Translations under genes and position numbers: made by a program | Shown: positions 34,718 through 59,312 of the stretch, piece by piece | How the letters are laid out: each line of letters begins with the position of its first letter | How positions within the stretch are numbered: the stretch's first letter is position 1 | NCBI GenBank assembly: GCA_009103225.1 | Contig: RHPI01001037.1 | Span: 1,670,551 to 1,734,550, forward strand | Direction of reading: 5' to 3' | From: Chlorokybus atmophyticus | Taxonomy: Eukaryota > Plantae > Mesostigma and Chlorokybus algae | Length of the DNA: 64,000 nucleotides | Notes under the pieces: generated by a model | The model's input: the letters and a program-made list of their open reading frames with translations, nothing else | Database searches by the model: none | Told to the model about the DNA's origin: nothing

Positions 34718-37700
34718 TCACTTCTTTCTATTGTCAGGAGTAGGCGGCGAAGAGTACGGGAACGGGTTGCTGAACGGTACGGGATAGCAGAGTGTCTCTG
34801 CGTGATACTCGCCTTGCCCGTGTCCACCCTGAATGCATAGTTTGTCCTCCTCGCCCTCCACGCCCGACACAACAACTGCGGCATGTTCGAACCGGAAAGG
34901 TGACGTGTCCGACGAGGGCGCCTGAGTCCACGTGTTGGTGTTGGTGTCGTATTGCCACATGTCGTTGTACTCCTGCTTGAGACTGGACCCGCCGTGAATG
35001 TAGATGTATGAGCCGTACGCGACGGAGGCGTGGCTGTAGCGGCCAACATAGTTGTTGTTGTTGTTGTTGTTGTTGTTGTCGTCGGAGGAGAGTTGGAAGG
35101 TGTTGAGTTGCGTGAGCACGTTGTCGGCGGGGTTGTACGAGAAGAACTCGTTGGAGAAGCCGCGATCGGTGTACCCGCCGTAGATGTACACAACATCATT
35201 GGCCGACACAGCAATGCTGTGGCCAAAGCGCTTGCCCGCAACAGTGCCATCGACAGACGTGGGTGTAACAGACCGCCACTTGCGTGTGTCGATACTATAA
35301 ACCCACATGTCGTCGTAGAGAGCGTGTCCCGAGCGCCCACCGTACACTATCATCGTCCCATCCGACAACACACCCGCAGCGTGGTCGAAGCGTGCGGGTG
35401 GTACGCCTCCATCACCCTGCGGGCTGATGAATCGCCACGAAGAGGACGTGAAGGAGAACTCCCACACGTCGCTGAAGGCGTACGCGCTACGCTCACCGCC
35501 ATACACGTACATGGCGTCGTTGTACACGACAGCGGAGTGAGAGTAGCGAGGAGGGGGAGACACGCCGTCCTGAGGGGACACTTGCGACCACATGCGTTCA
35601 GGAACCCAATTCACTTGCGTGTCCTCGCCGTCGGCAGCGGGCTCAATCACAGCTCCCACTGTCGCGGGATGAACCTATACATCAAGGTAGAGGTTTCAGC
35701 ACGAGAGTTGTGTTGGGTGCACACGTGTAATGAACTCACTCACAAGGAGCATGCAAAGGTGCACATGAGCCCGCGCACGCAAGCTCGCACGCTCGCACGC
35801 GTACGATTGTGCACGCACATATGTCCACACGTACACATACCACTCTGGGTGTGCAATGTGTTTACCTTGATGACGGTGATGTCATCCCAGAATGCGTGTG
35901 CTGGGAGTACGTTGGGTACGCCCGTGAGGTCATCCAGTCCCGCTATGCCAGCAGAGATGAAGATCTTGTTGATGACAATAGGGTTGGGATCGCTATACAC
36001 GGGTACCCCATCAATTGACACAGTCGTGCCGGTTGAGTCACTGCGGACCTCAAACAGATGCCAGCCAGCGTTACGCGTCGCATTGTAAGCCGACTCCCAT
36101 GGCGACGCCGTGGCATATTTCCCAACAGTAGACAGCGTGTACACGCCGACAGCCGTGCTCTGCGTGTCGGGAAGGAGCCCAACATGCGTGTCGGGGAGAA
36201 GAAGTCTCTCCCCATCAGGTGTGCCTCCACACACATCCCAATCAGGACTGATGAAGTGGGCTGCTGTCTCAGAGTCAGAATCATAGAACTGAGCCCGAAG
36301 GATGAAGCTATCCGTCGGGTCATCGATATCAGCCTGAAGAGCACCAGCGAAGCCATACTTGGCATGAAGACTGTATCGGCCTGCATAAGGCAACTCCTCG
36401 CTGATATCAAACCCGTCAGCTGAGGGCGATATCACCCCGCAGGGAGCCGCGGGGACGAAAGGAGTCGAGGTGATATCGCCCTCGCCCTCGAAATCTTCGT
36501 AGAAAGCGAAGACGGTCTCGGGCTTGGATTCGGATATCACTGCGGGGTTGCCATAGAACATCTCGAGTGAGAATGACGTTGGGAGCACGTTGTCACCCGG
36601 GATGGAGACCCAGAATACGGTCTCGGGCTTGCCGCAGGTCCAGCTGTCGACAACGTGGTCGAGGATGGTTGATTGACCAGTGACACGGAAGACGATATCC
36701 GTGCATGCGCCTGACATTGAACCGCTAGCGACAAGCGACTCGGTGTCGAGCACAACTTGCAGCGTGGCGTCACCATCCAGTAGAGCATTGACTGTAGTAA
36801 CAACAACAAGAACACATCAGGGGTGAAGAGCAGTGTCGGTAACGCGTGTGCGTGTGCATGTGTGTGTCTACATGTGTTTGCGCGTATGTGTGTACTTACG
36901 TGTCACGCTGATGAGCTTGCGGTACGATAGGCTGTCATCAGCACCGCCGGAAGCACCTTCCAGCATCCACATATCATTGAGGTACGTCTTGTCATACAGG
37001 GCGCCGCCGAAGATGTAAATGCTGCCGTTGTATGCCGCAGCCGTGTGCTCGAAGCGCTTCGCTTGCAGCGGGAGCGTCTCATCATCTGTGAGAAGCTCAG
37101 CCCAACGTGCGGGAAGCACCTGTAGTGTGCTTTGAGGCGTGCTCAATAGTGAGATAAATAGGTTGTAAGGTCCTGGTGTCGGGGCCGTGTACACCACTTG
37201 GTACGCGCCCTGGCCGATAGACACCACCTCGGGGACCACCACGACGTTGTCCACGAGCATGTGGTTGATTGTGATCGCGCGGGTCACGTCATAGCTCGCA
37301 TCGCGGTCGACAATCACGTTGGCGTGCGGATCCATGGAGTCCTTTGCTACAACGATGAAAGAGGAGGGGACCCCGGCCACGGCCGTCGGGACCTGCCCAC
37401 CAACAAGGTCCAGACTAGCAAGGTCCCCGGCAGTAACCTCCAACGTAAAAGGTGCGGGGACAAGAGGCTCGTCGGGACGCGTGCCATCACCCAACAGAAG
37501 GACATTGAGAAGGTAGCTCCCGGCTTCATCCAGGTGGTATGTTGCCAACCAGAGGTCACCTAAGCAAGATGTGTCGCCCGGACCAAAGCGATGGTCACTA
37601 ACAAAGAGCCCATTGGGGAGCTCGAGGCTCAGAAGCTTGCGGAAGGGACCCTCTGGATCGGTGATGTTGGGTGTGTCGGACGGTGCGCCATCTATGTTGG

Positions 37701-40700
37701 GCACGCTCCCATAGCATTGGTCCTGTTCTGGGCAGTTGATGGCGGGCTCGTGTTGGACAGTGTCCTGCTTGTGGAGGATGGGGTACTCCACGGCGTCATG
37801 TGTGTCCTGGAAGTACTGCAAATCAAAGCGCGTGGTCTCGACGGCAAAGCGAGCCTCGCGACCAAGGTAGCAGTACTTGCACTCGTCCTTGGCCTGGATG
37901 AGAACATACTGGCCGAGGGACCCGGAGTACGCCCTCGAGTTGGTCAAACCACGGCCCGATGCCACGCTGAAGCGTGCACTCGGGGCTCCAACACCTTGGT
38001 TACGGAAGTCACCCTCCACGGGTGCAAAGGACCCGAGACCTCCCAACCATGAAGGTGGCCCGAGCGGTGCATTGAATGGGTCCAAGTCACCTTGGAGACA
38101 ATTGTTGTTGGAGTTGTCACCGACCCAACAATCGGCAGAGTAGCCCTTGGCGATGTCGCCCTGTCCTTCATTGAAAGGCCAGTAGCCGGCAATCTTGTCG
38201 AGCTCCATGTAAGGTGGGCAGTGCATCGTGTCGATGATCTCCTGTTGGGTGCGAGCCACCTTCCAGAGCTTGGCCTCGTCGATCATGCCCGTGAAGGCGT
38301 AGCCGATGTCAAGCGGGGCTTGCAGGTTGTTGGGTGGGATGCGCTTGGCGACATCATAGGACTTGGATGTAATCTCAACACCATCTTGATAGAGTGTGAA
38401 GCTGGTCTGGTTGTAGACCGCTGCAATGTGTGTCCATCCACCCGTGAGTTGGAATGGTGCACTCACTCTTCGCCACTCGCCATTGCCGGCGTACACGGTG
38501 GCCATCAGCGTGTCATAAGTCGGGGAGAACTTGAGGTCGTAGCTACGCGTGTCCACGCCAGCCTTATCCTGATCGTTCTTGTTGAACACGTAACGGAAGG
38601 TCGGGTTGATGTAATACGGCGTGCCCACATTGGCCAACAACCGCCTCCTTCCTGACTGCTCAGGTGGGGGCGGGGAGGGTGGAGGTGGCACGGGAGGGGG
38701 AGGTGAGGGTGGAGGTGGGCGTGGGGGCGGGGGGGGGGGGGGTGAGGGAGGAGGAGGAGAGGGTGTTACGCCACGCGGGCTCACCCAAGCCTCCATTGTG
38801 AAACCTGATGTGGTCAGACCCAACAGGCGCGTGTCCTCAACCTCCACGCTGGTCTGCCCGTTGAAGAAGAGGGACGTGCCAGCTGCCAAACACAATCAAC
38901 ACACATGAGACAACATATACACACCCGGTAAGTGATGACACTTTATCATTGGGCACATACCTGAAACTTCGACGCAGACGCCGTCAAGGAATGCTGCGGG
39001 GCCCTCAGTGGTGTTGATGGTGGCTGTGAGGACATAAGTGCCCATGACCTGTGGCGTGTAGGTGACAGTGTACGTGCCGTCTTCGTTGTCAACAACGTCG
39101 GCGACAATGTCGTGAGGACCCGTCAACGTGACCGTCACATTGTCGCCACCAGTAAACCTTAGACAACCGCTGTCATCCTTGGCTTGCACCTGTGAGGTTA
39201 CAACAAGCGCGTCAAAGGTAGGTACAACTACTTACAGTATGACTGTTGCCAGAGGCAATGATGCACTTACAGTGAATGAGCTCATGACACCGGCAGGGTT
39301 TGCATCTGAGACATTGGTCAGCGGGACGGTAGTGTTGGCAGAGGAAGGTCCGGCCATCACAAGTGTGACAAAGGATGCAGCGAGTTCATCATCCATGGTG
39401 ACGTTGACATTGTAGGGTCCGCATTGGCCGGGGACAGGCTGCACGGCGACGAGGTATGTGCCATCGTCCATGTCCACAACTTCAGCATCCACGGTGATGG
39501 AGTCATTGGCAGCAACCAAGACTTGGACTTGAAAGTTGTCGCCACCAGTGAGACGGCGAGCAAAACACTTGGTGCGTGCGGTGATTGAGAACACGCCAAC
39601 CCCATCAATGTCAATAGACTCCACGCCGGGTCCCACGAGCTCGGTTGCGTGAGGATCAGTTGAGTCATCATAAGAGATGTTGGCCCACAACTTATCTGCA
39701 CCCATGAGTGGCATAGCATCGCTCGTGTGGAAGTCCGCATAATCTGATGCAGCCGGACCCGTGCCTTCGCTCATGCTCCAAGCATGTGTGACATAATCAG
39801 ATCTAATAGGTGCGACTGCGCTGCTCTTAGGGCGAACCCACCCGAACCGGCTGAGTCTGTTGGGACACCTCACGCGATCCTTCATCACATATGGTGGCGT
39901 GAAGCCCGCTGTGGCAAACTCAACAGCAAAGTCCTCTGGCAGAGCCGACAGGTCCACGTCGTTGATGTTTCTACGCATGCCTTCATCCGTAATGGCCACG
40001 CCGGTGATGAGACCGTTGAAGCGGTTGGTCTCGCCCTCGGTGGAGTCTTGACCGATAAGAATTGGGACATCGGCTGCGAGGATGATGTCACGGGGGATGT
40101 CAACAAACACTTGCTTGTCCTTGAGGATGCCATCGATGTAGAAGAACATTGATACGCCGGTGGGACTGGGAACATACGTGGCCGCCACGTGCTGCCACCT
40201 GCCCTCGAGAACAGTTGCACGCCATGAGACCACCTCGCGGTACACCTCACAGGGCTCGCAGTCGCAACCAACCAACACCGCCAAATAAAGGCGGTCGTCC
40301 TTGATGCCAAAGGAAACAGAGACCAATCCATCTGAACAGAAGGTCATTCACAGAGTCAGTCATTACATGCTGTGATCAAACACATGTACCATTCACACAA
40401 CATGCACTAGGACCCATTAGTACCTGCATATGGTCTGGAGAGAATGGCCTGAGGTCCTTCCGTGCTGTAAGCGTAGATCCAGGCTTCGAGTGTAAAGCTG
40501 TCGGCCGCAAATGAGGCTGGACTGAAAACTGTGGCATTGGCGTCACGTGTGAAGTCGAGAGCGTACTCGCTAGTGAAGTACTGCGCCGTGAGCTCGCCCT
40601 CGGACAGAGCACGCGAGTAAACCCAAACCTCATCAACACGCCCATTCACCTGTCAATGGCGAGTAGCGACTTAGATCTGATTCAGAATGTGTGGGCAAGT

Positions 40701-43700
40701 CATGCATGACGGTTTTGCCAACATACCGCAGAGAGTATGGTTCCCTGCAGCAGGAACTCAGTGAATCCGGCGCCGATGAACTCCAGGATCGAGGCATCTG
40801 TGGAGTTCATAGCATTCTTTCCGTTGATGTAGACAGCGCCAGAGCCATCAGAGTACGTGCCCGCGATGTGCTTGTAGCAGCCAATGTGGGCACCCTGCAG
40901 CATCTGCAAAACATCCTCCTGCACAGATGAAAGATGTAAACAAGTATCTTACAATGAACTGGCCCAATGCATCCGAGGGACTTACTGTTGAGGCACTTAC
41001 CGACTGCTCATAGTCGACGCGGACCCACATGGAGATGGTGAAGTCCATGAAGGCCTCCGAGTCTTGAGACAGGTATGAAGCCGGCACGGGGAGAGTCAAG
41101 TTGGCACCACCCGTAAATGGACCAACAAGGACAGCTCCATTGTCAATAGCATTGCGATCCTGGGTAGAACAACAACCTCAATGTTAGGTGCCTGCTGCTT
41201 GGCAACATAATCTTAAGAGTGACAGTAAGCACTACTCTACCTCAACAAGTTGAGCAAGGCCATTGTCGCCGAGGACGTATATGCCGTGGCGGTCATTGCC
41301 GGAGGAGTCCGTAATGGTCATGACGTTGTTGTCGGCAAAGTTGGAGTCGGGCACGAAGTTGAATGTGTAATGGGCTTCGAGTCCTCGGTTGAGGTCAGTC
41401 ACGGAGGGCTGCACGAAGAACTGCGCTGGGAAGTCCTCCGGGATGTTGCTGACGTCCACATTGGGTGAGTTGGTGGCGAAGACTTGTCCCGGACCGAATG
41501 CGTCACCTTGAGGTGGCTGCGTGACGGTGAACACGTTGTTGCCGTGTGTCAACGGGCCCTCGGCGGGTGCTTGGACCCCGTTAAACACCGCTCCGAGCCA
41601 CTTTGTGGATGCAAGGTTGGTCGCTATTACGCTTACTTCCTGCCCGCCGGCAACATCGCCCACATCAGGGATGACCGCAAGCGTGTTGGGTGGGAGCCAA
41701 GGCGCCGCAGATTGAACGAAGTCCACATTGACTGCTGTCAAGACAGCTGCTGGGTCCGAGGCCAACGAGGCCACCTTGTTGTCATCATCCAAGCTTGTGA
41801 ACTTGTAATAAGCAGCAAGGCCTTCCTCATCACCCTGCAGGGACCCTCCCCAAGTATACTGAGCCACTTCATCTGAGGTGAGGGACTTGTTGAACACCAT
41901 CACTTCGTCAACGAGACCCGCGAAGAACTCGGAGGGGGCAGCCAGGTCAGAATTGCGGTAGTCCTGGCAGATGCTGAAGATACCCGTGATGTTGGGCTTG
42001 CTCGTCGTCGTGAAGCGGCTGGCAAGCTCGCCATCAACGTAGAACTGGCCCTCGCCCTCGCTGTCGATGCTAACAAACACGTGGTGCCATTGGTTGGGTA
42101 GAGCTGGAGGTCCCGTCTGTTACACACAGCCATGTCAGTGTCTGCAACTTTGGACTGGAGGCCCATATCATGCATACAAGTACACAGCAAACATGTGTAC
42201 CCGTGTGACATCAAGGATGGCATCGTCGTAGTAGAAGAAGCGGTGGCCGTCGTACATGACGAGGGCAGAGTTCTTGCCATTGTTGCTCTCAAATGACAAA
42301 ACAGTCGACACGGGCTCAACATCGCCCGAGCGGACTGCCCGGATGAGACCGCGCTTGTCACCCTAAGGGCATACAAGGAATAAGAACATGCTCATAGCTT
42401 GAGCGTATGACAACAACAACATCAACAACATACCTTTGAAAGGAGTGACCTGCGACGAACTGGCATCTCTTCTGCGGGTGCAGGCATGTCATAAGGCATG
42501 ACCCATGCACCAAAGGCATATCCATCTCCATTCAACAGGGCGTTGACCTCCGAGTCAACCGCAGTCATGTAGGAGTTGTCGCCACTGCACTCAAGCGCAG
42601 CCTGGAGCACAAACACATTCCGTGAGTCATGTGTGTGTCACAAAATGCTCTGTAACTGTGCATGCATGAGACATACTCCTCATGCACCGTTATGCCACTC
42701 GCCTCAGTAATCTCATAGACCATTGGGTTGGCGGTCAGAGGCGTGGCGCCAAAGAACAGCACCATTGGTTGGGCAGATGTGGGTGTGTTGCAGGTGAGCT
42801 CGCGTCCGTCGGGGTTTGTTGCGTTTGCGTCTGTCCTGAAGACTGCGGTCATGTTGTATGTTGCCAGTGACAGTTTTGTGCCACACGTGGGGTCAGATAT
42901 GCTCCCCGGCAACATATGCTGCATGGAGTCTCCCACAATCACGCCATCGGCACATTGCTCGGGATACCACCCTGGTTGGTTCTCCTGTTTCATGCAAAAC
43001 TGAGTAAGATGGCAGAGCGTTGCAACACAACTCCTGCGTGTATGCATGTGCTGGTTTCTACCTCGCAGATGGTGAAGTCTTGAACCACTTCCTTTACGCC
43101 CCATGTGCATGAGAGCCAAGGCGAGGGCGCAAAGTTGAAGCCCGCAATGTCCAGAGTCTCTCCACCCGTCAGCTTGCTCTTTGGTATGCTTTGGATTTCC
43201 TGTTGACATATGCGACAACACGTTCAACACAACCATCACCTACTCCATCTCCACTTCCTCCGGCAGCATGTTACCTCATAGTTCACGCCGTTAATGGTGT
43301 AGATCCAGCTAGGGTGCCACGGGACGGGTGTGAACTTGTAGTTCAATGTGCCTGTGGATGAGGTGACTGCCTGGCCATCTGGTGTACTGTCATCAACGTT
43401 CTCGCTGAAGCGGAGGTAAGCCAACACTTGGAGTTCTTCCCACATGGGTGATAGAGGAGAGGTCCACGCAGTGGAAGCCAACACGTCATCGTCGACCAAC
43501 ACGTTGAACCAACGCAACTCGTCAACCAGACCGGTGAAGTTGCCGGTTTTGAGGGTGACAACACCTGCATTGAGTGGCGTATGAGTTGATGAAGTTTACT
43601 GATTGGTATACTACAGTAAAGTACAACCGTACTCACCTTTCAAGTTGGTTGTTGCGCTGCTCTGGTACATGACAACACCGTCGACGTACAGGGTGGCAAC

Positions 43701-46700
43701 ACCTCCCACGGAGAGTGCGACGTAATGCCACTCGTTCACGCTCGACACATTTGCAGCATTGTACTGCTGACTGCAACCACAATGCAGCAGTTCTTCATAT
43801 GAGCACCATCAACGTTGAACCCAGCAGCAACAGCAACAGCAACACCACCACCACCAACAACAACATAAACAACATACCTGTCAAAGTTGGGTGAGTTCAC
43901 CACAAACTTGCCATAGTAGTACTGCACACTCTGTGTCGTGCCTGTTGTGCCACTAATCTTGAACAGTGTCTGCTCATCCTCGTCATTGTTGGGTTGCACC
44001 CACATTCCAACAGTCATTCCATCCCCAAGTATGCCTCCCACAACCACAGACACCTCCTCATCGCCAGTCAGCTCCAACACCTCCTCCATAAAGGTTTGCT
44101 TCTCGCCGGGGATGCCAACAAGCCCGTCGTTGGAAGCAGCAAAGAACATCTGCTCGGTTGCAAAAGGAGCGGGAGGAGATGCACAGGTGATGGAAGTCCA
44201 GCCACCGTAAATGTAGGTGGCTGAGCGAGAAGTCTGAAGGTTGCTCATGAAGTGGCCCTGTACACACAACAACGAGTCAAGCAGTGTTGTGTGTGTGTGT
44301 GTGTCAAGCAGTGTGTCACATGCATTGTTGTGACATGTATCTTACTGTTGCAGTGATGGCAGCTGAAACGTCATCCTGGCTGATGATGTTCCCGTTTGCG
44401 TTGGCGACCTCTGCAGGACCGAGTGACCCGACTGTGGTGTACACCCAATGGAATGGGTTGGCGAGGGCAAAGTACTTCTGGTTGGGTTGGGTGAAGTACT
44501 GATCGTAGTAACGGGGAGGTTCGTTGGACATGCGCGGGGTGTAGGGCATGTTGGTGCGGGCGTTGTCGTCAGCAAAGAGACCGCATGACAAGAAAGGGCT
44601 GCGAGCGAAGCCGACACCCGTGAACGTAACCATGTTGGACTCGCCGACGGGGTAAGCGTCCGAGTCGGGTGAAGGATGAGTTACAACCAACGGCGGGGCG
44701 AAGGGTGCGCCCGTGTAGGCATATCGCGAGTGGGAGGGGAAGGATCCCGCTGTACAGGACAACAAACAACTTCAGTAACATGATGCACTCAACTATCATC
44801 ACCTTCATTGGCTCTACTCACGTGCAAAGTAGATGTAGTCGTTGTCGAGGTCGAGGGTAGCGGTGGCGTTCTTGGCGTGGTTGCGCATGCCCGCAGTGTA
44901 GCCGGCCTTATCGGTAACATACAAGGAAACCGCAGGCACGTTGACGGGGTAGCTGGCCGAGCGGTCAAAAGCTGGCTCCTCCATCTACACATAATCACAC
45001 TCACACTCACACTCACACTCAAAATTACAGTCACAATCACAATCACGAATGCCAATGATGCATACCTGTAGGAGACGGCGGCGGCCTCCACCTTCATCAG
45101 CAGGTGGTGGAGGAGATGGAGGAGGAGGAGGTGGAGGAGAGGGTGCAGGGCCAGGTGGAGGTGGGCTAGGAGGCGGGGGGCTCGGTACCGCCGCTGCAAT
45201 GCCACAAGTGTTGGTGAATGTTGGGTTAGAGTTGTGTCACAAGACCAGAGTGCCTGCATACCAACCATCTTACCAGCGAGGCCTTCCTGGCACGGGTTGT
45301 TGAAGCGTGCCCACAACACGCGGCCGGCCGTGTAGTCGAGCTGTTCCCCGCGCGGGGCCTCGAGCTCGCGGGACGGGAGTGAAAGAGGCATCTTGAACAT
45401 GATGTCCTGTACACAAGACAACACGTCAGTCTCATGCAAGACAGTGTGGATGAGTGTATCAAGACCTCCTCCTTACGTGGAGCTCTGGCAGTGGGACGAA
45501 GCGGTTGTACACCACGACTTCATCAATGAACCCGTCGAAGGTCAGGAGGGTCCCGTCAGAGCACTGCATGCCAATCTTGAAGCTACAGCACATATTGGGA
45601 TCGCCGACAGCAACATCATCGGTGTCCACAAAGCCATCCATGCGCATGTGGTCGTCTGATCCATCCTCAGCATCTGCAGGGTTTCCATCACCAGAATCCC
45701 CACCGTCTGAGCCATCCTCATTATCATCTTGGAGAAGCCTGCAAGGATGTGTCATACCATCATGTTGGGATGTGATACAAGTGAGGTGGTTGAGAGATTG
45801 CCATGGTGATGTGTGTTTACCTTCGTCGGCCTCCACCTTCTTCAGGTGGAGGCGGTGCTGATGGAGGGGGTGGCTGGGCAATTGTGCACTTGATCGGGTA
45901 CATACCCGTGTCAAACTCAGCAACAACTTGGCCGTCAACTGCAAAGAGCCATGATACACAATTAAGCCACACATACGTACGCATCATGTCCTCATTGTCT
46001 CACGTCGTGAGAGTGAAACAGCAGACCCCATCGACTCACCTGCCAGGTTGCCGTGTCCCTCGCCGTCGATGGCCACCATGGCGTGGTGCCACATGTAGTC
46101 CTCGTACGTGCAGTTGGAGTACCACGTGTCGGTTCCATCAGTGAAACCAAACTGCTTGTTGGCAGTCTGCCAGATGAGAGCCATCTTGCATTCATACCTG
46201 ACCAACACCTATAACACACAAGTGGGATGGTCAGTATGACCCACACATACACACGTACACGCAAGGAGAGGATGTGTGTATCTCTACCTGATCTTCAGAG
46301 ACTGGTCTGTCTGTGATCTTCAATTGCACGCAGTAGAACGGCGTGGCTGTGATGAGGTACTGATCGAATGCATAAAAGCACACTTGTGATATGGCGGGGC
46401 GTGTGTCGAGTGCGGGATCCGCTGTTCCCGGCCACGTGAACGTGCGTGTGCCTCGCTCGCCAAGGGAGTTGTTGGGTGGGGTGAGGGACACGTACGTGTC
46501 GAGGAAAGCGCCCTCGGGGAGACCCGTCGTCTCGATGATAAGCATCGTACAGTCGTCGGTGTCCTCGGCGATCACATCGAAGTCGAAGTCCTCGCCGCGG
46601 TAATGTGTCAGCGTGGGCACGTTGTACTGCACAACACCAGAGGCGACATCAGATTAGACAGCCTTGAGGCAGGAGTTGACTGGTGCATCTGCGTGTACTT

Positions 46701-49700
46701 GCGTGTGGGTGTGCGTGTGCTTGTGCTTGTGCGTGTGTGCATAGCACGCGTGCGCGTTCGAGCACATACGCACACTCACATGCCTGACACAAAACACACG
46801 TATACGCGTGTCTGTTACAATAGAATGTCACCACACCTGGGAGAGGTCCAGAGCGGCAAACCAGTTCTCCACTCCCGGGTTCTTGTTTGGGTCGCCCGTT
46901 CGAATGAATGTGGGTAGGGTGTTGCCCTGGCAGGCAGAGGCCACAGGGACAACGCTGTTGCCCGACGTCTGTCCGCAGGTGGCATTGCCCGTACCAAGGT
47001 TGAGCGGGTCAGGTGTACACATCGTGAAGTCACCGTCACCGAGGCCGCAGATGGTACACTCTTGGTTACCGTAAGTACCATCAACATCTGCGTGTAAACA
47101 CAAGGTCAGTATGGGACAACAACAACAACAACAACAATTACTACTACTACTACTACTGCTTACTGTTGAAGGTTGGGGTTCCGGCGATGTTGTTCTTGCA
47201 GTTGTGGTTGCAGAAGTTGAGGTTGCCGTCATATAGGTAGAGCATGAAGTCGAGCGGCACCTTCACTTTGCTGTCGCGGACCATCACCACCATGTTGTAC
47301 AGTCCACCACGCAGCTTCGTGCCCGGACCCGTCGTCCACGTCTGCACACAACAAGCGTCACAACCCACACGCAAACCCGACACAATATTGCCACATACAC
47401 ACATACACTCATCTCCCAACCTGCCAGACGACGAGTCCGGGTACTTTAGCGCTCGGGTCGAACGAGTTGCTCGTCTGCGGCGTTTGTTGCGGCGTTCGAT
47501 CGTTGGGACACGCATTATCAGGTTGGCCATCTCCGTTCCTATCCTGCGTGTACATGTTGGAGTTGCAGTCGAAGTTGCCGTAGTACTGGTTCTTGTTGAA
47601 CACGCCGTCGGCCCTCGAACGCATGATGCCGCCCATCTCCATCTGATCTCCGAAGGTGAACTGCAGGTTGCGGTTGTCGACGGGGTCGAGGTCGTAAGCC
47701 GCGATCTGGAACTTGGCGTAGTTGGGGTACGACACGTGCATCACGGGCATCACGGGGATCTGGGAGGCGATCGGGGAACGGTTGCCGTCGCCAGTCACCG
47801 AAACTGTGATCTCCAACCTGAATCGTCCCTGTAATACAGTACTTTGCTTTTACTACAAGCGTCACACCCTTCTCAATACAGTGTTTGATGTACTTGAGGA
47901 GTTTGTGTGTGTGCGTGCGCGCAAGTTATACACACACACGCGCACGCACATACATACGCGTGTGTACATGCGTGCACGTGCGTGTCCGTTTGTGTACCTG
48001 GGCGTTGTTGTTTAGCCAGTAGTCTAACTCGGAGGGACACACGCCTGGGTTGGTGTTCCATGGCACGCTGCACTCGTATATGCGATCTCCACCGGTGTAG
48101 AAGGCTGTGTACACTGGCGCGCCTGACCCCGGGTAATTGGTTGGAAGCGCCGTCTGCGGCCTATTCATAACCGAGCCTTTAGCACATATTGTGGCAAACT
48201 TGCACGACAAAAGCAAGTGTGAGGGTGTTATCTCCTTACGTGTAGGTTTTGACCCAACGCGACACGCCTCGCACATAGTTGCCGGTAATGAGGTTGCTGC
48301 TGGCATCCACTGTGTCGAGTTGAAGGATGACATTGTCCGCCAAGCCGTCACCATAGAAGAACCCGTACACCTATGCAAAGCATAATGTTGTTCATTGCAA
48401 TTGTAATGTAAATGTAACTGTTGTACACTATCACAGTATGTGTGCGTGTCTGTGTGTGTCTGTTTACCTGAGACCAGGGCGCGCACAAGTTCTTGTTTGT
48501 GGCGTACGCGGTGTTGCTGCTCCCGCAGTCTGCTGGCAGCGTGCCGGACGGCCCCGGATAATCGCAGTAGAAGGGTGTTGGGCACTCCTTCACAATGGTA
48601 TTATCCTGCAGACAAACAACAATCCAACCATGAGCATGCCGAACACAGACACACACACGTGCTTGCACATACACGCACCCACACATACATATACCCCCCC
48701 CCCCCCNTTAGGGTTTTACCCCCCCTTACTGCTGACTGCCTCTTGCTCATTGTTGACCTTACCCGATTAAACATATGCGTTTTCCCCTCTCCTTTGTGTG
48801 CTCCTCTATGCAGCTTCCCATTTCCGCTACGGCACCATCAGTTGGATCCCCTTGCAAGGCCCCAACGCCGACGGCTCCTTCTCCGTCCAGTTCACCTTCC
48901 GCGCCGCCTTCCGTCGCAACTACGAGTGGGGCAAGTGGTTCCGGGAGCAGTGGCAGATCACTTCCTCATCCACCTACCCGGACCCATACCCCCCCACCCC
49001 CCCACCCCACCCCCACTTACCGAGTACACGCTATACGGGAACTTCACATAGAAATATTGTTGCTGCGGCACGATGGTCGGCGCAATATTCTGGCACCCCG
49101 CTCCATTACTCGCTAGCGTTGACCCAGCTGGACACGTGAAGCACCCCGCTTGATTCGGGTTGGTCGCACAGTTACTCGGCACAGTCCTCCAGAACGTCTC
49201 CGTCCCATGCCAGTTGAGTTGGGTGTTTGGGTCCGGGTAGGTGGATGAGGAAGTGATCTGCCACTGCTCCCGGAACCACTTGCCCCACTCGTAGTTGCGA
49301 CGGAAGGCGGCGCGGAAGGTGAACTGGACGGAGAAGGAGCCGTCGGCGTTGGGGCCTTGCAAGGGGATCCAACTGATGGTGCCGTAGCGGAAATGGGAAG
49401 CTGCATAGAGGAGCACACAAAGGAGAGGGGAAAACGCATATGTTTAATCGGGTAAGGTCAACAATGAGCAAGAGGCAGTCAGCAGTAAGGGGGGGTAAAA
49501 CCCTAAAACCTTCCCTACTTGGCCCCCCTGCGCTGCTTTCCCAACTGGTTCCAACTTAATTTTGTAATGCAAGACCGAGGCTTGCTTGCCCCCAGCCACT
49601 GGCTGCTATGCCACAGCAAGCTGCTACTGACAAGTTTTATGCAACATGTGCATGTATTGCTGGTCTGTCGTGTTAGTAACTAGAGTTGTTTCATGCTGTG

Positions 49701-49879
49701 ATGGCTTGCAGCTGTCTGCTCTCCCCCCTCCCCNNNNNNNNNNNNNNNNNNNNNNNNNNNNNNNNNNNNNNNNNNNNNNGGGGGGGGGGGCAATGCACGT
49801 AATGCACGTACGCACCTGCGGCAAGTTGTAAGAAGGCTAGAAGCAGCAGCCCCAGAAGCTGCCTCAGTGGGGCCGCCAT
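34718..49879 (-). CDS. Giant secreted multidomain protein (~3,800 aa, ~31 exons): signal peptide, Sib-like N-terminal module, Ig-like domain, ~6 LamG/ConA-like domains, IPT/TIG-like and filamin-type Ig repeats, Kelch propeller with DUF2341-like insert
   Basis: Exon 1 49879-49816 MAAPLRQLLGLLLLAFLQLAA with GT donor. Exon 2 49400-49021 ASHFRYGTISW. LamG motifs FTMEAWV/WTHIAAVY/FTGMIDEAKLW and FTLEAWIY/WQHVAATY/FNG. Filamin motifs VQAKDDSGCLRFTGGD...DNEDGTYTVTYTP. Kelch motifs RYSHSAVVYNDAMYVYGG...W. Long open exons 38883-36900, 36782-35867, 35685-34718. No C-terminal transmembrane helix seen. Confidence 0.85.
48708..49506. repeat. 279-bp inverted duplication (arms 48708-48986 and 49228-49506) copying the exon-2 acceptor region of the giant gene
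   Basis: The arms are exact reverse complements as far as I can read, and the ORF track shows the same peptide ASHFRYGTISW... on both strands. The left arm starts right after an N at 48707. Confidence 0.92.
49734..49779. other. Assembly gap (46 N) flanked by poly-C and poly-G runs, inside intron 1 of the giant gene
   Basis: Seen directly. Confidence 0.97.

Positions 49880-50973: not shown

Positions 50974-59312
<8,339 letters not shown>

What the first reader, a model, noticed from the sequence alone, without database searches (positions are those of the whole stretch)
38635..45880. Four RR(R/S)LL motifs, three after polyproline linkers, in loops of the giant protein: a probable protease-processed polyprotein
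Seen: (a) ...SPPPPEQSGRRRLLAN at 38635-38770; (b) PSPPPPSPPPPGPAPSPPPPPPPSPPPPADEGGGRRRLLQ at about 45066-45194; (c) QPPPPSAPPPPEEGGGRRR|LLQD at about 45730-45880, split by an intron; (d) MPAPAEEMPVRRRSLL at about 42440-42490. (a) and (d) sit at the same position, right after the LamG AWVxP strand. Established: RRLL/RxLx is the site-1 protease (SBT6.1/S1P) motif used on plant PME and RALF precursors, and SPPPP is the extensin-type hydroxyproline O-glycosylation signal. Inference: the precursor is nicked in the Golgi at glycosylated loops, giving non-covalently held chains or released modules. This would be an undescribed maturation system for an algal ECM protein.
Basis: partly seen in the sequence, partly recalled or inferred. 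Interest (0 to 1): 0.8.

Follow-up and report, generated by a model that had tools for sequence, protein, structure and literature searches.

The report
Protease-site tags in giant algal protein
A 3,866-residue secreted protein of the early-branching alga Chlorokybus carries five short R-x-L-L tags, mostly at the ends of proline-rich loops inside folded lectin-type domains; relatives as distant as Pyramimonas keep them at the same places and they match the cutting site of the Golgi enzyme site-1 protease, so the protein is probably nicked into several chains, although no cut has been observed.

Summary
On the minus strand lies a 32-exon gene (49879-34718) for a 3,866-aa secreted LamG/filamin/DUF2341/Kelch protein. 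It has five R-x-L-L sites, not four. A fifth, RKLL, lies at 37630-37641. Shuffles of the same protein give 0.12 on average.

- **Conservation:** the sites sit at the same alignment positions in a Chlorokybus paralogue and a Mesostigma homologue. Three of them are also kept in Pyramimonas and Cymbomonas. The linkers around them are not conserved. In 14 streptophyte sites P4 is always R, P2 is L or M, P1 is always L, and P3 varies. That is the specificity published for site-1 protease (S1P/SBT6.1).
- **Enzyme:** a published table lists a Chlorokybus S1P orthologue.
- **Transcripts:** spliced contigs confirm site d and the start of the mini-exon holding site b.
- **Limits:** cleavage itself is untested. 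"Polyprotein" overstates it, because three sites lie in loops inside LamG domains and a fourth probably lies within a domain. Cutting there would nick the protein rather than release modules.

The scan noted the same Pro-rod plus GGR(R/K)LL tag earlier in other giant genes of this genome.

Verdict: a real, conserved motif and a probable new class of S1P-type substrate.

The parts
34718..49879 (-). Whole gene: 32 exons, 3,866 codons. Domain order: signal peptide, Sib-like N-terminal module, several LamG (Laminin_G_3) domains, filamin/Ig repeats, DUF2341, C-terminal Kelch propeller. No transmembrane segment.
   Evidence: Model built from spliced transcript contigs, tblastn of homologues and splice-site scoring. 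One open frame with a single terminal stop. Pfam hits. Hydropathy scan. 23 synonymous against 7 non-synonymous differences to the transcript contigs.
45732..45828 (-). Site c: GGG-RRRLL-QD (residues 778-782), codons split by intron 45739-45820. Preceded by PPPPSAPPPP (45844-45873) and followed by a 26-residue acidic stretch (45651-45728). Lies in a loop of the first LamG domain.
   Evidence: An unspliced reading hits TAA directly after RRR. Homologous positions carry RSLL (Mesostigma, Pyramimonas) and RHLL (Cymbomonas). LamG profile positions 63-105 lie before the site and 126-151 after it. The junction itself is not covered by transcript contigs.
45066..45193 (-). Site b: a mini-exon that encodes only AAVPSPPPPSPPPPGPAPSPPPPPPPSPPPPADEGGG-RRRLL-Q (RRRLL = 45069-45083, residues 949-953). 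It is an inter-domain linker after ...RFNNPCQEG.
   Evidence: The acceptor at 45193 is used in a spliced contig, with 47 nt read into the exon. The donor is CAG|GTATGC. The Q|MEEP junction matches the paralogue's RRRSLLQMEDP. This is the most widely conserved site; the 14-sequence consensus reads RRLxQ.
42440..42457 (-). Site d: MPV-RRRSLL-SK (residues 1600-1605), in the loop after the AWVMP strand of a LamG domain; the exon ends two codons later.
   Evidence: Intron 42363-42433 is confirmed by a spliced contig, with no sequence difference in the exon. Homologues carry RSML, RKLL, RSLL+RKLL and RRLL.
38635..38766 (-). Site a: a 35-residue Ser/Pro tract (38662-38766), then EQSG-RRRLL-AN (RRRLL = 38635-38649, residues 2654-2658). 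It is inserted in the loop after the AWVSP strand of a LamG domain.
   Evidence: The structure model with an alignment (pLDDT 84) puts the motif in a low-confidence coil between strands 27-35 and 96-101. The same insertion ends in GGRKLLQ in the paralogue and GGRRRLLQ in Mesostigma, and is absent in chlorophyte members. An in-frame cryptic intron (38656-38769) scores below every real intron. Not covered by reads.
37630..37641 (-). Site e (new): DPEGPF-RKLL-SLELPNG (residues 2990-2993), in a long unassigned loop about 75 residues before a filamin repeat.
   Evidence: The homologous position has KRRSLLGLDLPEG in the paralogue and SRRHLLGDGPPEG in Mesostigma, and is absent in chlorophyte members.

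Best explanation
The five R-x-L-L motifs are endoproteolytic processing sites. The precursor enters the ER through its signal peptide. In the Golgi it is cut after the second Leu (R-x-L-L, then the cut) by the membrane-anchored subtilase site-1 protease (S1P, alias SBT6.1; the Chlorokybus orthologue is Chrsp66S07212). The Ser/Pro tracts, probably polyproline-II rods that are later hydroxylated and arabinosylated, hold three of the sites (a-c) away from the folded protein so that the protease can reach them.

Sites a, c and d lie inside LamG domains, and site e probably lies inside another domain. Cutting there nicks the protein but leaves the two halves of each sandwich associated. Only site b lies between domains. 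It could separate an N-terminal piece of about 930 residues from the rest.

Shown: the motifs, their positions in loops, their conservation, the match to S1P specificity, expression and splicing around two of the sites. Inferred: that cutting happens, which enzyme does it, in which compartment, and what happens to the fragments.
For: 1. Enrichment: 5 observed against 0.12 expected, with 0 of 5,000 shuffles reaching 5. The same holds in the paralogue (4 against 0.09), Mesostigma (7 against 0.21) and Pyramimonas (5 against 0.14).
2. Positional conservation within otherwise unalignable linkers. Sites b, c and d are shared by Chlorokybus, Mesostigma, Pyramimonas and Cymbomonas. Sites a and e are shared by Chlorokybus and Mesostigma (provenance).
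3. Pattern of constraint. In 14 streptophyte sites P4 is R in 14, P2 is L in 13 and M in 1, P1 is L in 14, and P3 is R, S, K or H. This equals AtSBT6.1 R-(R/K)-X-L / R-(R/K)-L-X and human S1P R-X-(L/V/I)-X, and RX(hydrophobic)X with Leu preferred. The same tetrapeptides (RRLL, RKLL, RRML) mark Golgi processing of plant type-1 PMEs.
4. Different codons at each site point to selection on the peptide.
5. Signal peptide and no transmembrane segment.
6. Accessibility: site a lies in a low-confidence coil of an otherwise confident LamG model. Loop positions of c and d follow from Pfam profile coordinates.
7. Enzyme: a SKI-1-like subtilase of Chlorokybus is listed in PMC6713707, and the family is reported throughout Archaeplastida. 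Its prodomain has RKLM exactly where Arabidopsis has RHLL and Marchantia RRLL, five residues before the conserved (V/I)TSMF. The human enzyme autoprocesses at RRLL.
8. The Pyramimonas protein comes from a transcriptome, so Pro tract plus RRRLL is present in mRNA in this family.
Against: No peptide, N-terminus or fragment has been observed, so cleavage is wholly inferred.

S1P motifs are short, and many proteins with R-x-L-L are not cut.

The extra conservation of Gly-Gly before and Gln after the basic residues at the Pro-rod sites is not explained by known S1P preferences.

Other subtilases exist in this genome (earlier scan notes).

More distant family members have RRLS, RRLQ or RRMQ, or lack the loops altogether, so the sites are not essential for the fold or for every member.

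Site a, the junction in site c and the donor after site b lack read support.
Confidence: 0.5

Rival explanations
1. The motifs are real processing sites, but another secretory or extracellular protease cuts them. Candidates are a kexin/furin-like convertase cutting after the basic residues, another algal subtilase, or a metacaspase-like enzyme. On this reading the Leu-Leu are P1'-P2' residues.
For: Most sites carry two or three consecutive basic residues. Chlamydomonas ECM pherophorins are cleaved, and convertase-like sites were proposed for them. Earlier scan notes report other subtilase families in this genome.
Against: The distance between the basic cluster and LL is not fixed unless the motif is read as R-x-L-L. 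Six of the 14 streptophyte sites have Ser or His between them (RRRSLL, RRHLL). One site has no dibasic pair (RARSML) and several have only RK. The invariant residues are R(P4), L/M(P2) and L(P1), which a dibasic convertase does not require.
Confidence: 0.2
2. The motif is conserved but not proteolytic. It could be a docking or sorting signal read in the ER or Golgi lumen. It could be a basic patch that binds acidic or sulfated wall polymers. It could also be a structural cap that ends the polyproline rod and re-enters the domain.
For: Only conservation is shown, not cutting. In sites a, d and e the residues after LL lead straight back into the domain, so the Leu pair could pack against it. A short helix is predicted at residues 82-84 of the model.
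Against: The same motif occurs in four different structural contexts: two different LamG loops, an inter-domain linker and an Ig-like loop. Pyramimonas has it doubled in tandem at two sites. That is typical of redundant cleavage sites, as in the paired PME motifs, and not of a packing element. The motif region has the lowest model confidence.
Confidence: 0.15
3. Convertase cleavage followed by amidation. Gly-Gly-Arg-Arg-Arg would be a classical amidation signal: cutting after the basic residues, trimming by a carboxypeptidase, and conversion of the C-terminal Gly to an amide by PAM, which exists in green algae.
For: Gly directly precedes the basic residues at sites a, b and c and at their Chlorokybus and Mesostigma counterparts. 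PAM and amidated peptides are documented in Chlamydomonas.
Against: Gly is absent at sites d (PV-RRR) and e (PF-RK), and at all Pyramimonas sites (DK-, CL-, LK-, NL-). The invariant Leu-Leu has no role in this pathway. An earlier follow-up on a paralogue also preferred cleavage over amidation (unchecked note).
Confidence: 0.05
4. Artefact: chance matches in low-complexity sequence, or intronic Pro-coding tracts wrongly read as exons.
For: Pyrimidine-rich tracts rarely contain stops. An in-frame GT..AG pair (38769..38656) flanks the Pro tract of site a. Site a and the site c junction have no read support.
Against: Shuffle test and positional conservation across about a dozen proteins, including a transcriptome-derived one. 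Spliced contigs include site d and the first 47 nt of mini-exon b. The cryptic intron has a donor score of -0.8 against 3.5-11.5 for the 31 real introns, and 75% G+C against 47.5%. Even if it were spliced, SGRRRLL would remain coding.
Confidence: 0.03

Closest known systems
Land-plant type-1 pectin methylesterase precursors, whose PRO region is removed at RRLL/RKLL motifs by subtilases including S1P/SBT6.1
   Same: Secretory cell-surface proteins. The same tetrapeptides (RRLL, RKLL, RRML) occur, often in pairs. Processing takes place in the Golgi as a step before secretion.
   Different: PMEs are small two-domain proteins cut once between domains to remove an inhibitor-like pro-region. Here there are five sites in a 420-kDa protein. 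Four of them lie in loops (three within LamG domains), three of them after Ser/Pro rods, and no pro-domain is evident.
Plant peptide precursors cut by AtSBT6.1/S1P (CLEL6/GLV1 at RRLR and RRAL; RALF23)
   Same: R-(R/K)-L-X or R-(R/K)-X-L sites in variable, non-conserved parts of the precursor. Cleavage occurs in the cis-Golgi, alongside proline hydroxylation and Hyp arabinosylation in the same pathway.
   Different: Those are small precursors that release signalling peptides after further cuts. Here the product would be a nicked structural giant.
Volvocine pherophorins (Chlamydomonas, Volvox): hydroxyproline-rich rod plus globular lectin-like domains, proteolytically processed in the ECM
   Same: Algal ECM chimeras of Pro-rich rods and globular carbohydrate-binding-type domains. 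Stable fragments are observed.
   Different: Unrelated domains. Their cleavage sites and proteases are not identified. No R-x-L-L cassette at the rod end has been described (my literature searches found none).
S1P substrates and autoprocessing sites in animals and their viruses (S1P site C RRLL, arenavirus GPC RRLL/RRLA/RSLK, SREBP, ATF6)
   Same: The motif RX(hydrophobic)X, with RRLL as the best substrate.
   Different: Those are membrane proteins cut once. None is preceded by a polyproline rod.
Receptors and ECM proteins nicked inside a domain and held together non-covalently (Notch S1 cut by furin, SEA and GAIN domains); from my own knowledge, not tested here
   Same: The cut lies in a loop within a folded domain, so the chains stay associated.
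   Different: Different proteases or autoproteolysis, and different folds. The comparison is an analogy for the expected product only.

Membership tests
S1P/SBT6.1 substrate | Cleavage motif R-X-(L/V/I)-X, or in plants R-(R/K)-X-L / R-(R/K)-L-X | tested here: met
   The five sites are RRLL, RRLL, RSLL, RRLL and RKLL. Motif definitions come from PMC7162652 and PMC3497046.
S1P/SBT6.1 substrate | The substrate travels through the ER and Golgi lumen | tested here: met
   The N-terminus MAAPLRQLLGLLLLAFLQLAA is the only strongly hydrophobic stretch of transmembrane length. The Mesostigma and Pyramimonas homologues start in the same way. No dedicated signal-peptide predictor was available.
S1P/SBT6.1 substrate | The site is exposed (loop or disordered) | tested here: met
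   Site a lies in a coil with pLDDT about 50 between two confident strands. Sites c and d lie between matched blocks of the LamG profile. Site b lies in a linker. Site e was not modelled.
S1P/SBT6.1 substrate | The organism encodes the protease | tested here: inconclusive
   Literature only. Chrsp66S07212 is listed as 'Peptidases_S8_SKI-1_like' in the supplementary table of PMC6713707. I could not search the genome itself.
S1P/SBT6.1 substrate | Demonstrated S1P-dependent cleavage | not testable with these tools
   Needs proteomics or an enzyme assay.
Laminin_G_3 (LamG / concanavalin A-like) domain | Pfam PF13385 match above the gathering score | tested here: met
   71.8, 34.5 and 58.6 bits against a cut-off of 27.6 on three exons. 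The same holds on homologue segments around sites a, c and d. The model is a beta-sandwich.
Extensin | Repeated Ser-Pro(3-5) glycomodules | tested here: met
   SPPPP is repeated at sites a and b. The motif definition is in PMC5371791.
Extensin | Tyr cross-linking motifs (YXY) and a mainly Pro-rich protein | tested here: not met
   The Pro tracts contain no Tyr and make up less than 3% of the protein. They are extensin-like modules in a chimera, not an extensin. Hydroxylation and arabinosylation cannot be tested here.
Polyprotein (independent modules released by cleavage) | Cleavage sites lie between autonomous domains | tested here: not met
   Sites a, c and d lie inside LamG domains. Site e lies in a loop about 75 residues before a filamin repeat, in an unassigned region. 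Only site b is inter-domain.
Convertase plus PAM amidation signal | Gly directly before a dibasic cleavage site, at all sites | tested here: not met
   Present at a, b and c. Absent at d and e and at all Pyramimonas sites.
PEXEL-type export motif RxLx[EQD] | E, Q or D at the fifth position | tested here: not met
   Only sites b and c (RRLLQ) fit. Sites a, d and e have A, S and S.

The most novel reading that the evidence does not exclude
The 'Ser/Pro rod plus G-G-R-(R/K)-L-L' unit is a portable processing cassette of the Chlorokybus/Mesostigma lineage. On this reading it has been inserted repeatedly into surface loops of folded domains in several giant secreted proteins. It would sit on top of an older set of R-x-L-L sites that date back to the common ancestor of chlorophytes and streptophytes. 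S1P-dependent maturation of wall and matrix proteins, known in land plants from PMEs, RALFs and CLELs, would then be an ancestral trait of the green lineage. The nicked LamG domains would act as non-covalent joints in the matrix or scale layer of these scale-bearing algae.
Probability: 0.2. Interest if true: 0.8.

Novelty: new variant of a known kind. Interest (0 to 1): 0.55.

Why it matters
S1P/SBT6.1 is known in land plants as the Golgi protease that matures pectin methylesterases and peptide-hormone precursors. Nothing is known of its substrates in algae.

A set of position-conserved R-x-L-L sites is shared by Chlorokybus, Mesostigma, Pyramimonas and Cymbomonas. This gives a concrete, testable substrate class. 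It would also date this kind of matrix-protein maturation to before the chlorophyte-streptophyte split.

The finding offers exact predicted neo-N-termini for a proteomics test. It also points to an unstudied family of giant proteins that, among the named organisms found here, occurs only in scale-bearing or theca-bearing green algae.

Tried and rejected
- **Word-index protein searches.** With the 675-aa exon, only three weak hits came back, probably because Pro-rich words filled the candidate list. With the 250 aa after site a, nothing came back. So no transcript-derived protein of this gene was found to test the Pro tract of site a.
- **Single-sequence structure prediction of the site-a LamG domain** gave pLDDT 41 and was unusable. 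It was replaced by a prediction from a 31-row alignment.
- **In-frame cryptic intron across the site-a Pro tract.** Scored and rejected.
- **PEXEL-like reading (RxLxQ).** Fits only 2 of 5 sites.
- **Dibasic convertase reading.** Does not explain RARSML, RRHLL or the invariant LL.
- **Amidation reading.** The Gly is not general.
- **Recent duplication or gene conversion of the motifs.** Rejected, because the codons differ.
- **Read laying.** It could cover only 6,000 bases in its single call. I chose 40001-46000 (sites b, c, d). The stretch 44982-45146 was skipped as a repeat and 45622-45833 had no contig, so the donor after b and the junction in c remain unconfirmed by reads. Site a was outside the stretch.
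- **Literature.** Searches for S1P in green-algal HRGPs and for Mesostigma scale proteomes found nothing that describes this. These searches are not exhaustive.
- **Complex prediction.** Not used, because a protease-substrate peptide pair is outside what it tests.

Full report
**What is there**

The finding lies on the minus strand, inside one large gene.

I laid transcript contigs of a public run on 40001-46000. Fourteen joints came out, 13 with GT..AG ends and one with GC..AG, all on the minus strand. The run's contigs differ from the window at 1-2% of positions. I combined these joints with tblastn of two homologues and a splice-site matrix trained on the confirmed introns.

- The result is a model of 32 exons, from ATG at 49879 to a stop at 34718-34720. 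It has 3,866 codons with a single terminal stop.
- The product starts with a hydrophobic signal-like sequence and has no other stretch of transmembrane character.
- Pfam finds Laminin_G_3, filamin, DUF2341 and a Kelch propeller.
- Of 30 differences between the window and the transcript contigs, all fall in my exons. 23 are synonymous. This supports the frame and shows purifying selection.

**Check of the observation**

- **Site a:** a 35-residue Ser/Pro tract, then EQSG-RRRLL-AN (RRRLL at 38635-38649).
- **Site b:** a 128-nt mini-exon (45193-45066) that encodes nothing but a Ser/Pro tract and ADEGGG-RRRLL-Q.
- **Site c:** PPPPSAPPPPEEGGG-RR|RLL-QD, split by an 82-nt intron (45739-45820). An unspliced reading runs into TAA at once.
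- **Site d:** MPV-RRRSLL-SK (42440-42457), two codons before a confirmed intron.
- **Site e (new):** GPF-RKLL-SL at 37630-37641. It came out of the full model.

Sites a and d follow AWVSP and AWVMP, and both lie just before position 40-44 of the LamG profile. Site c lies between profile positions 105 and 126 of another LamG domain. Site b lies in a linker between domains. Site e lies in a long loop about 75 residues before a filamin repeat.

An AlphaFold model of the site-a domain, built from a 31-row alignment, has mean pLDDT 84. It is a beta-sandwich in which residues 36-95 form a coil between two confident strands. The RRRLL sits where confidence is lowest.

**More than chance**

The pattern R[RKSH][LM]L occurs five times, against 0.12 in shuffles of the same protein. 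None of 5,000 shuffles reached five. A Poisson estimate from that mean is about 2e-7 (my arithmetic). The five sites use different Arg and Leu codons, so they are not recent copies of one DNA segment.

**Relatives**

A profile-free scan of 1.84 billion representatives with the exon holding site a gave two close hits and a tail of LamG giants.

Provenance:
- P0004 is a Chlorokybus atmophyticus protein on another scaffold (50% identity, a paralogue, N-terminally truncated).
- P0005 is from Mesostigma viride (41% identity, full length).
- P0156 is a Pyramimonas protein derived from a transcriptome.
- P0039 and P0141 are from Cymbomonas.
- P0022 and P0058 are from Tetraselmis.
- Several others come from metagenomes.

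In a MAFFT alignment of these with my model the linkers do not align, but the motif does. A dash means the loop is absent in that protein.

| Site | Window | P0004 | P0005 | P0156 | P0039 |
|---|---|---|---|---|---|
| c | RRLL | N-terminus missing | RSLL | RSLL | RHLL |
| b | RRLL | RSLL | RKLL | RRLL, twice | RRLS |
| d | RSLL | RSML | RKLL | RSLL and RKLL | RRLL |
| a | RRLL | RKLL | RRLL | - | - |
| e | RKLL | RSLL | RHLL | - | - |

Across the 14 streptophyte sites P4 is always Arg, P2 is Leu (once Met), P1 is always Leu, and P3 is free. Some members (P0043, P0057, P0141) have short loops and few or no motifs. The loops are therefore additions to the fold.

**What it most likely is**

The constraint pattern is that of site-1 protease.
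- AtSBT6.1 prefers R-(R/K)-X-L or R-(R/K)-L-X, and human S1P prefers R-X-(L/V/I)-X (PMC7162652).
- Arenavirus glycoproteins are cut at RX(hydrophobic)X with Leu preferred. The enzyme cuts itself at RRLL (PMC3497046).
- Plant type-1 pectin methylesterases carry RRLL, RKLL or RRML. A subtilisin-like protease processes them in the Golgi before secretion (PMC4008260).
- S1P-type subtilases are reported throughout Archaeplastida (PMC6713707). The supplementary table of that paper lists a Chlorokybus gene, Chrsp66S07212.
- In that sequence RKLM stands five residues before the conserved ITSMF. Arabidopsis has RHLL and Marchantia RRLL at that place. By analogy with the human RRLL site this is the likely autoprocessing site. 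That last step is my inference.

I therefore propose cutting after the second Leu in the Golgi. In CLEL6, SBT6.1 acts in the cis-Golgi before proline hydroxylation. SPPPP as a glycosylation module conserved in the green lineage is established (PMC5371791). Whether it is used here cannot be tested.

Sites a, c and d lie within LamG domains, and site e probably within another domain. Cutting there would nick the protein while the halves of each domain stay together. Only site b could separate pieces, an N-terminal part of about 930 residues from the rest. "Polyprotein" is therefore not the right word. Nothing here shows that cutting occurs.

**Rivals**

- A dibasic convertase does not explain RARSML, RRHLL or the invariant Leu pair.
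- An amidation signal fits the Gly-Gly of sites a-c, but not sites d and e or any Pyramimonas site. PAM does exist in green algae.
- A PEXEL-like reading fits two of the five sites.
- A non-proteolytic docking or capping role cannot be excluded. It fits poorly with the same motif in four structural contexts and with tandem doubling in Pyramimonas.
- An artefact is excluded by the statistics, the conservation, the spliced contigs for sites d and b, and the poor score of the only candidate cryptic intron.

**Known or new**

My searches found no description of such sites in algal matrix proteins. Chlamydomonas pherophorins are known to be cleaved, at unidentified sites (PMC6313938).

Within this scan the same Pro-rod plus GGR(R/K)LL tag was noted earlier on other DNA of this genome. 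These are other giant LamG genes, one of them 174 kb upstream of this window. Those notes are unchecked AI notes. They agree with my reading but are not independent evidence.

I class this as a new variant of a known kind: the protease specificity is known, but the substrate class and architecture are new. Gaps are listed under Tried and rejected.

Noticed in passing
window 48708-48993 and 49221-49506: A 286-nt inverted repeat, 99% complementary, with 227 nt between the arms. One arm holds the acceptor and first half of exon 2. The other arm lies inside my intron 2, next to a single N at 48707. A 46-N gap (49734-49779) lies in intron 1. Introns 1 and 2 both come out at 415 nt. This is probably a fold-back assembly artefact near gaps, but it could be real.
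   Followed up: partly
window 42602-42702: A GC..AG intron (GCGAGT...CAG), confirmed by a spliced transcript contig. All other joints have GT..AG ends.
   Followed up: yes
P0004, P0005, P0156, P0039, P0141, P0022, P0058: The named members of this giant-protein family come only from Chlorokybus, Mesostigma, Pyramimonas, Cymbomonas and Tetraselmis. These green algae bear body scales or a scale-derived theca (my own knowledge). A link to Golgi-made scales is possible. Absence from other green algae and from land plants was not tested.
   Followed up: no
Chrsp66S07212, sequence in the supplementary table of PMC6713707: The Chlorokybus S1P orthologue has RRKLM at the prodomain position where other plant S1Ps have R(H/R/K)LL. 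This is the same class of motif as in the giant protein.
   Followed up: partly
window 53163-53792: A 630-nt uninterrupted (GA)n microsatellite ending at a single N (53793), upstream of the gene.
   Followed up: no
window 35051-35077: A run of nine Asn codons in a loop of the C-terminal Kelch propeller.
   Followed up: no
window 45651-45728: A 26-residue acidic Asp/Gly/Ser/Glu stretch directly after site c. It was not covered by contigs of the 1-2% divergent strain, so it may evolve fast.
   Followed up: no
P0005 residues 32-60: A weak Pfam match, below the cut-off, of the N-terminus to SIBA-E_N (Dictyostelium integrin-beta-like proteins; E 8e-4). It echoes another first-reader note on this gene's N-terminal module.
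   Followed up: partly
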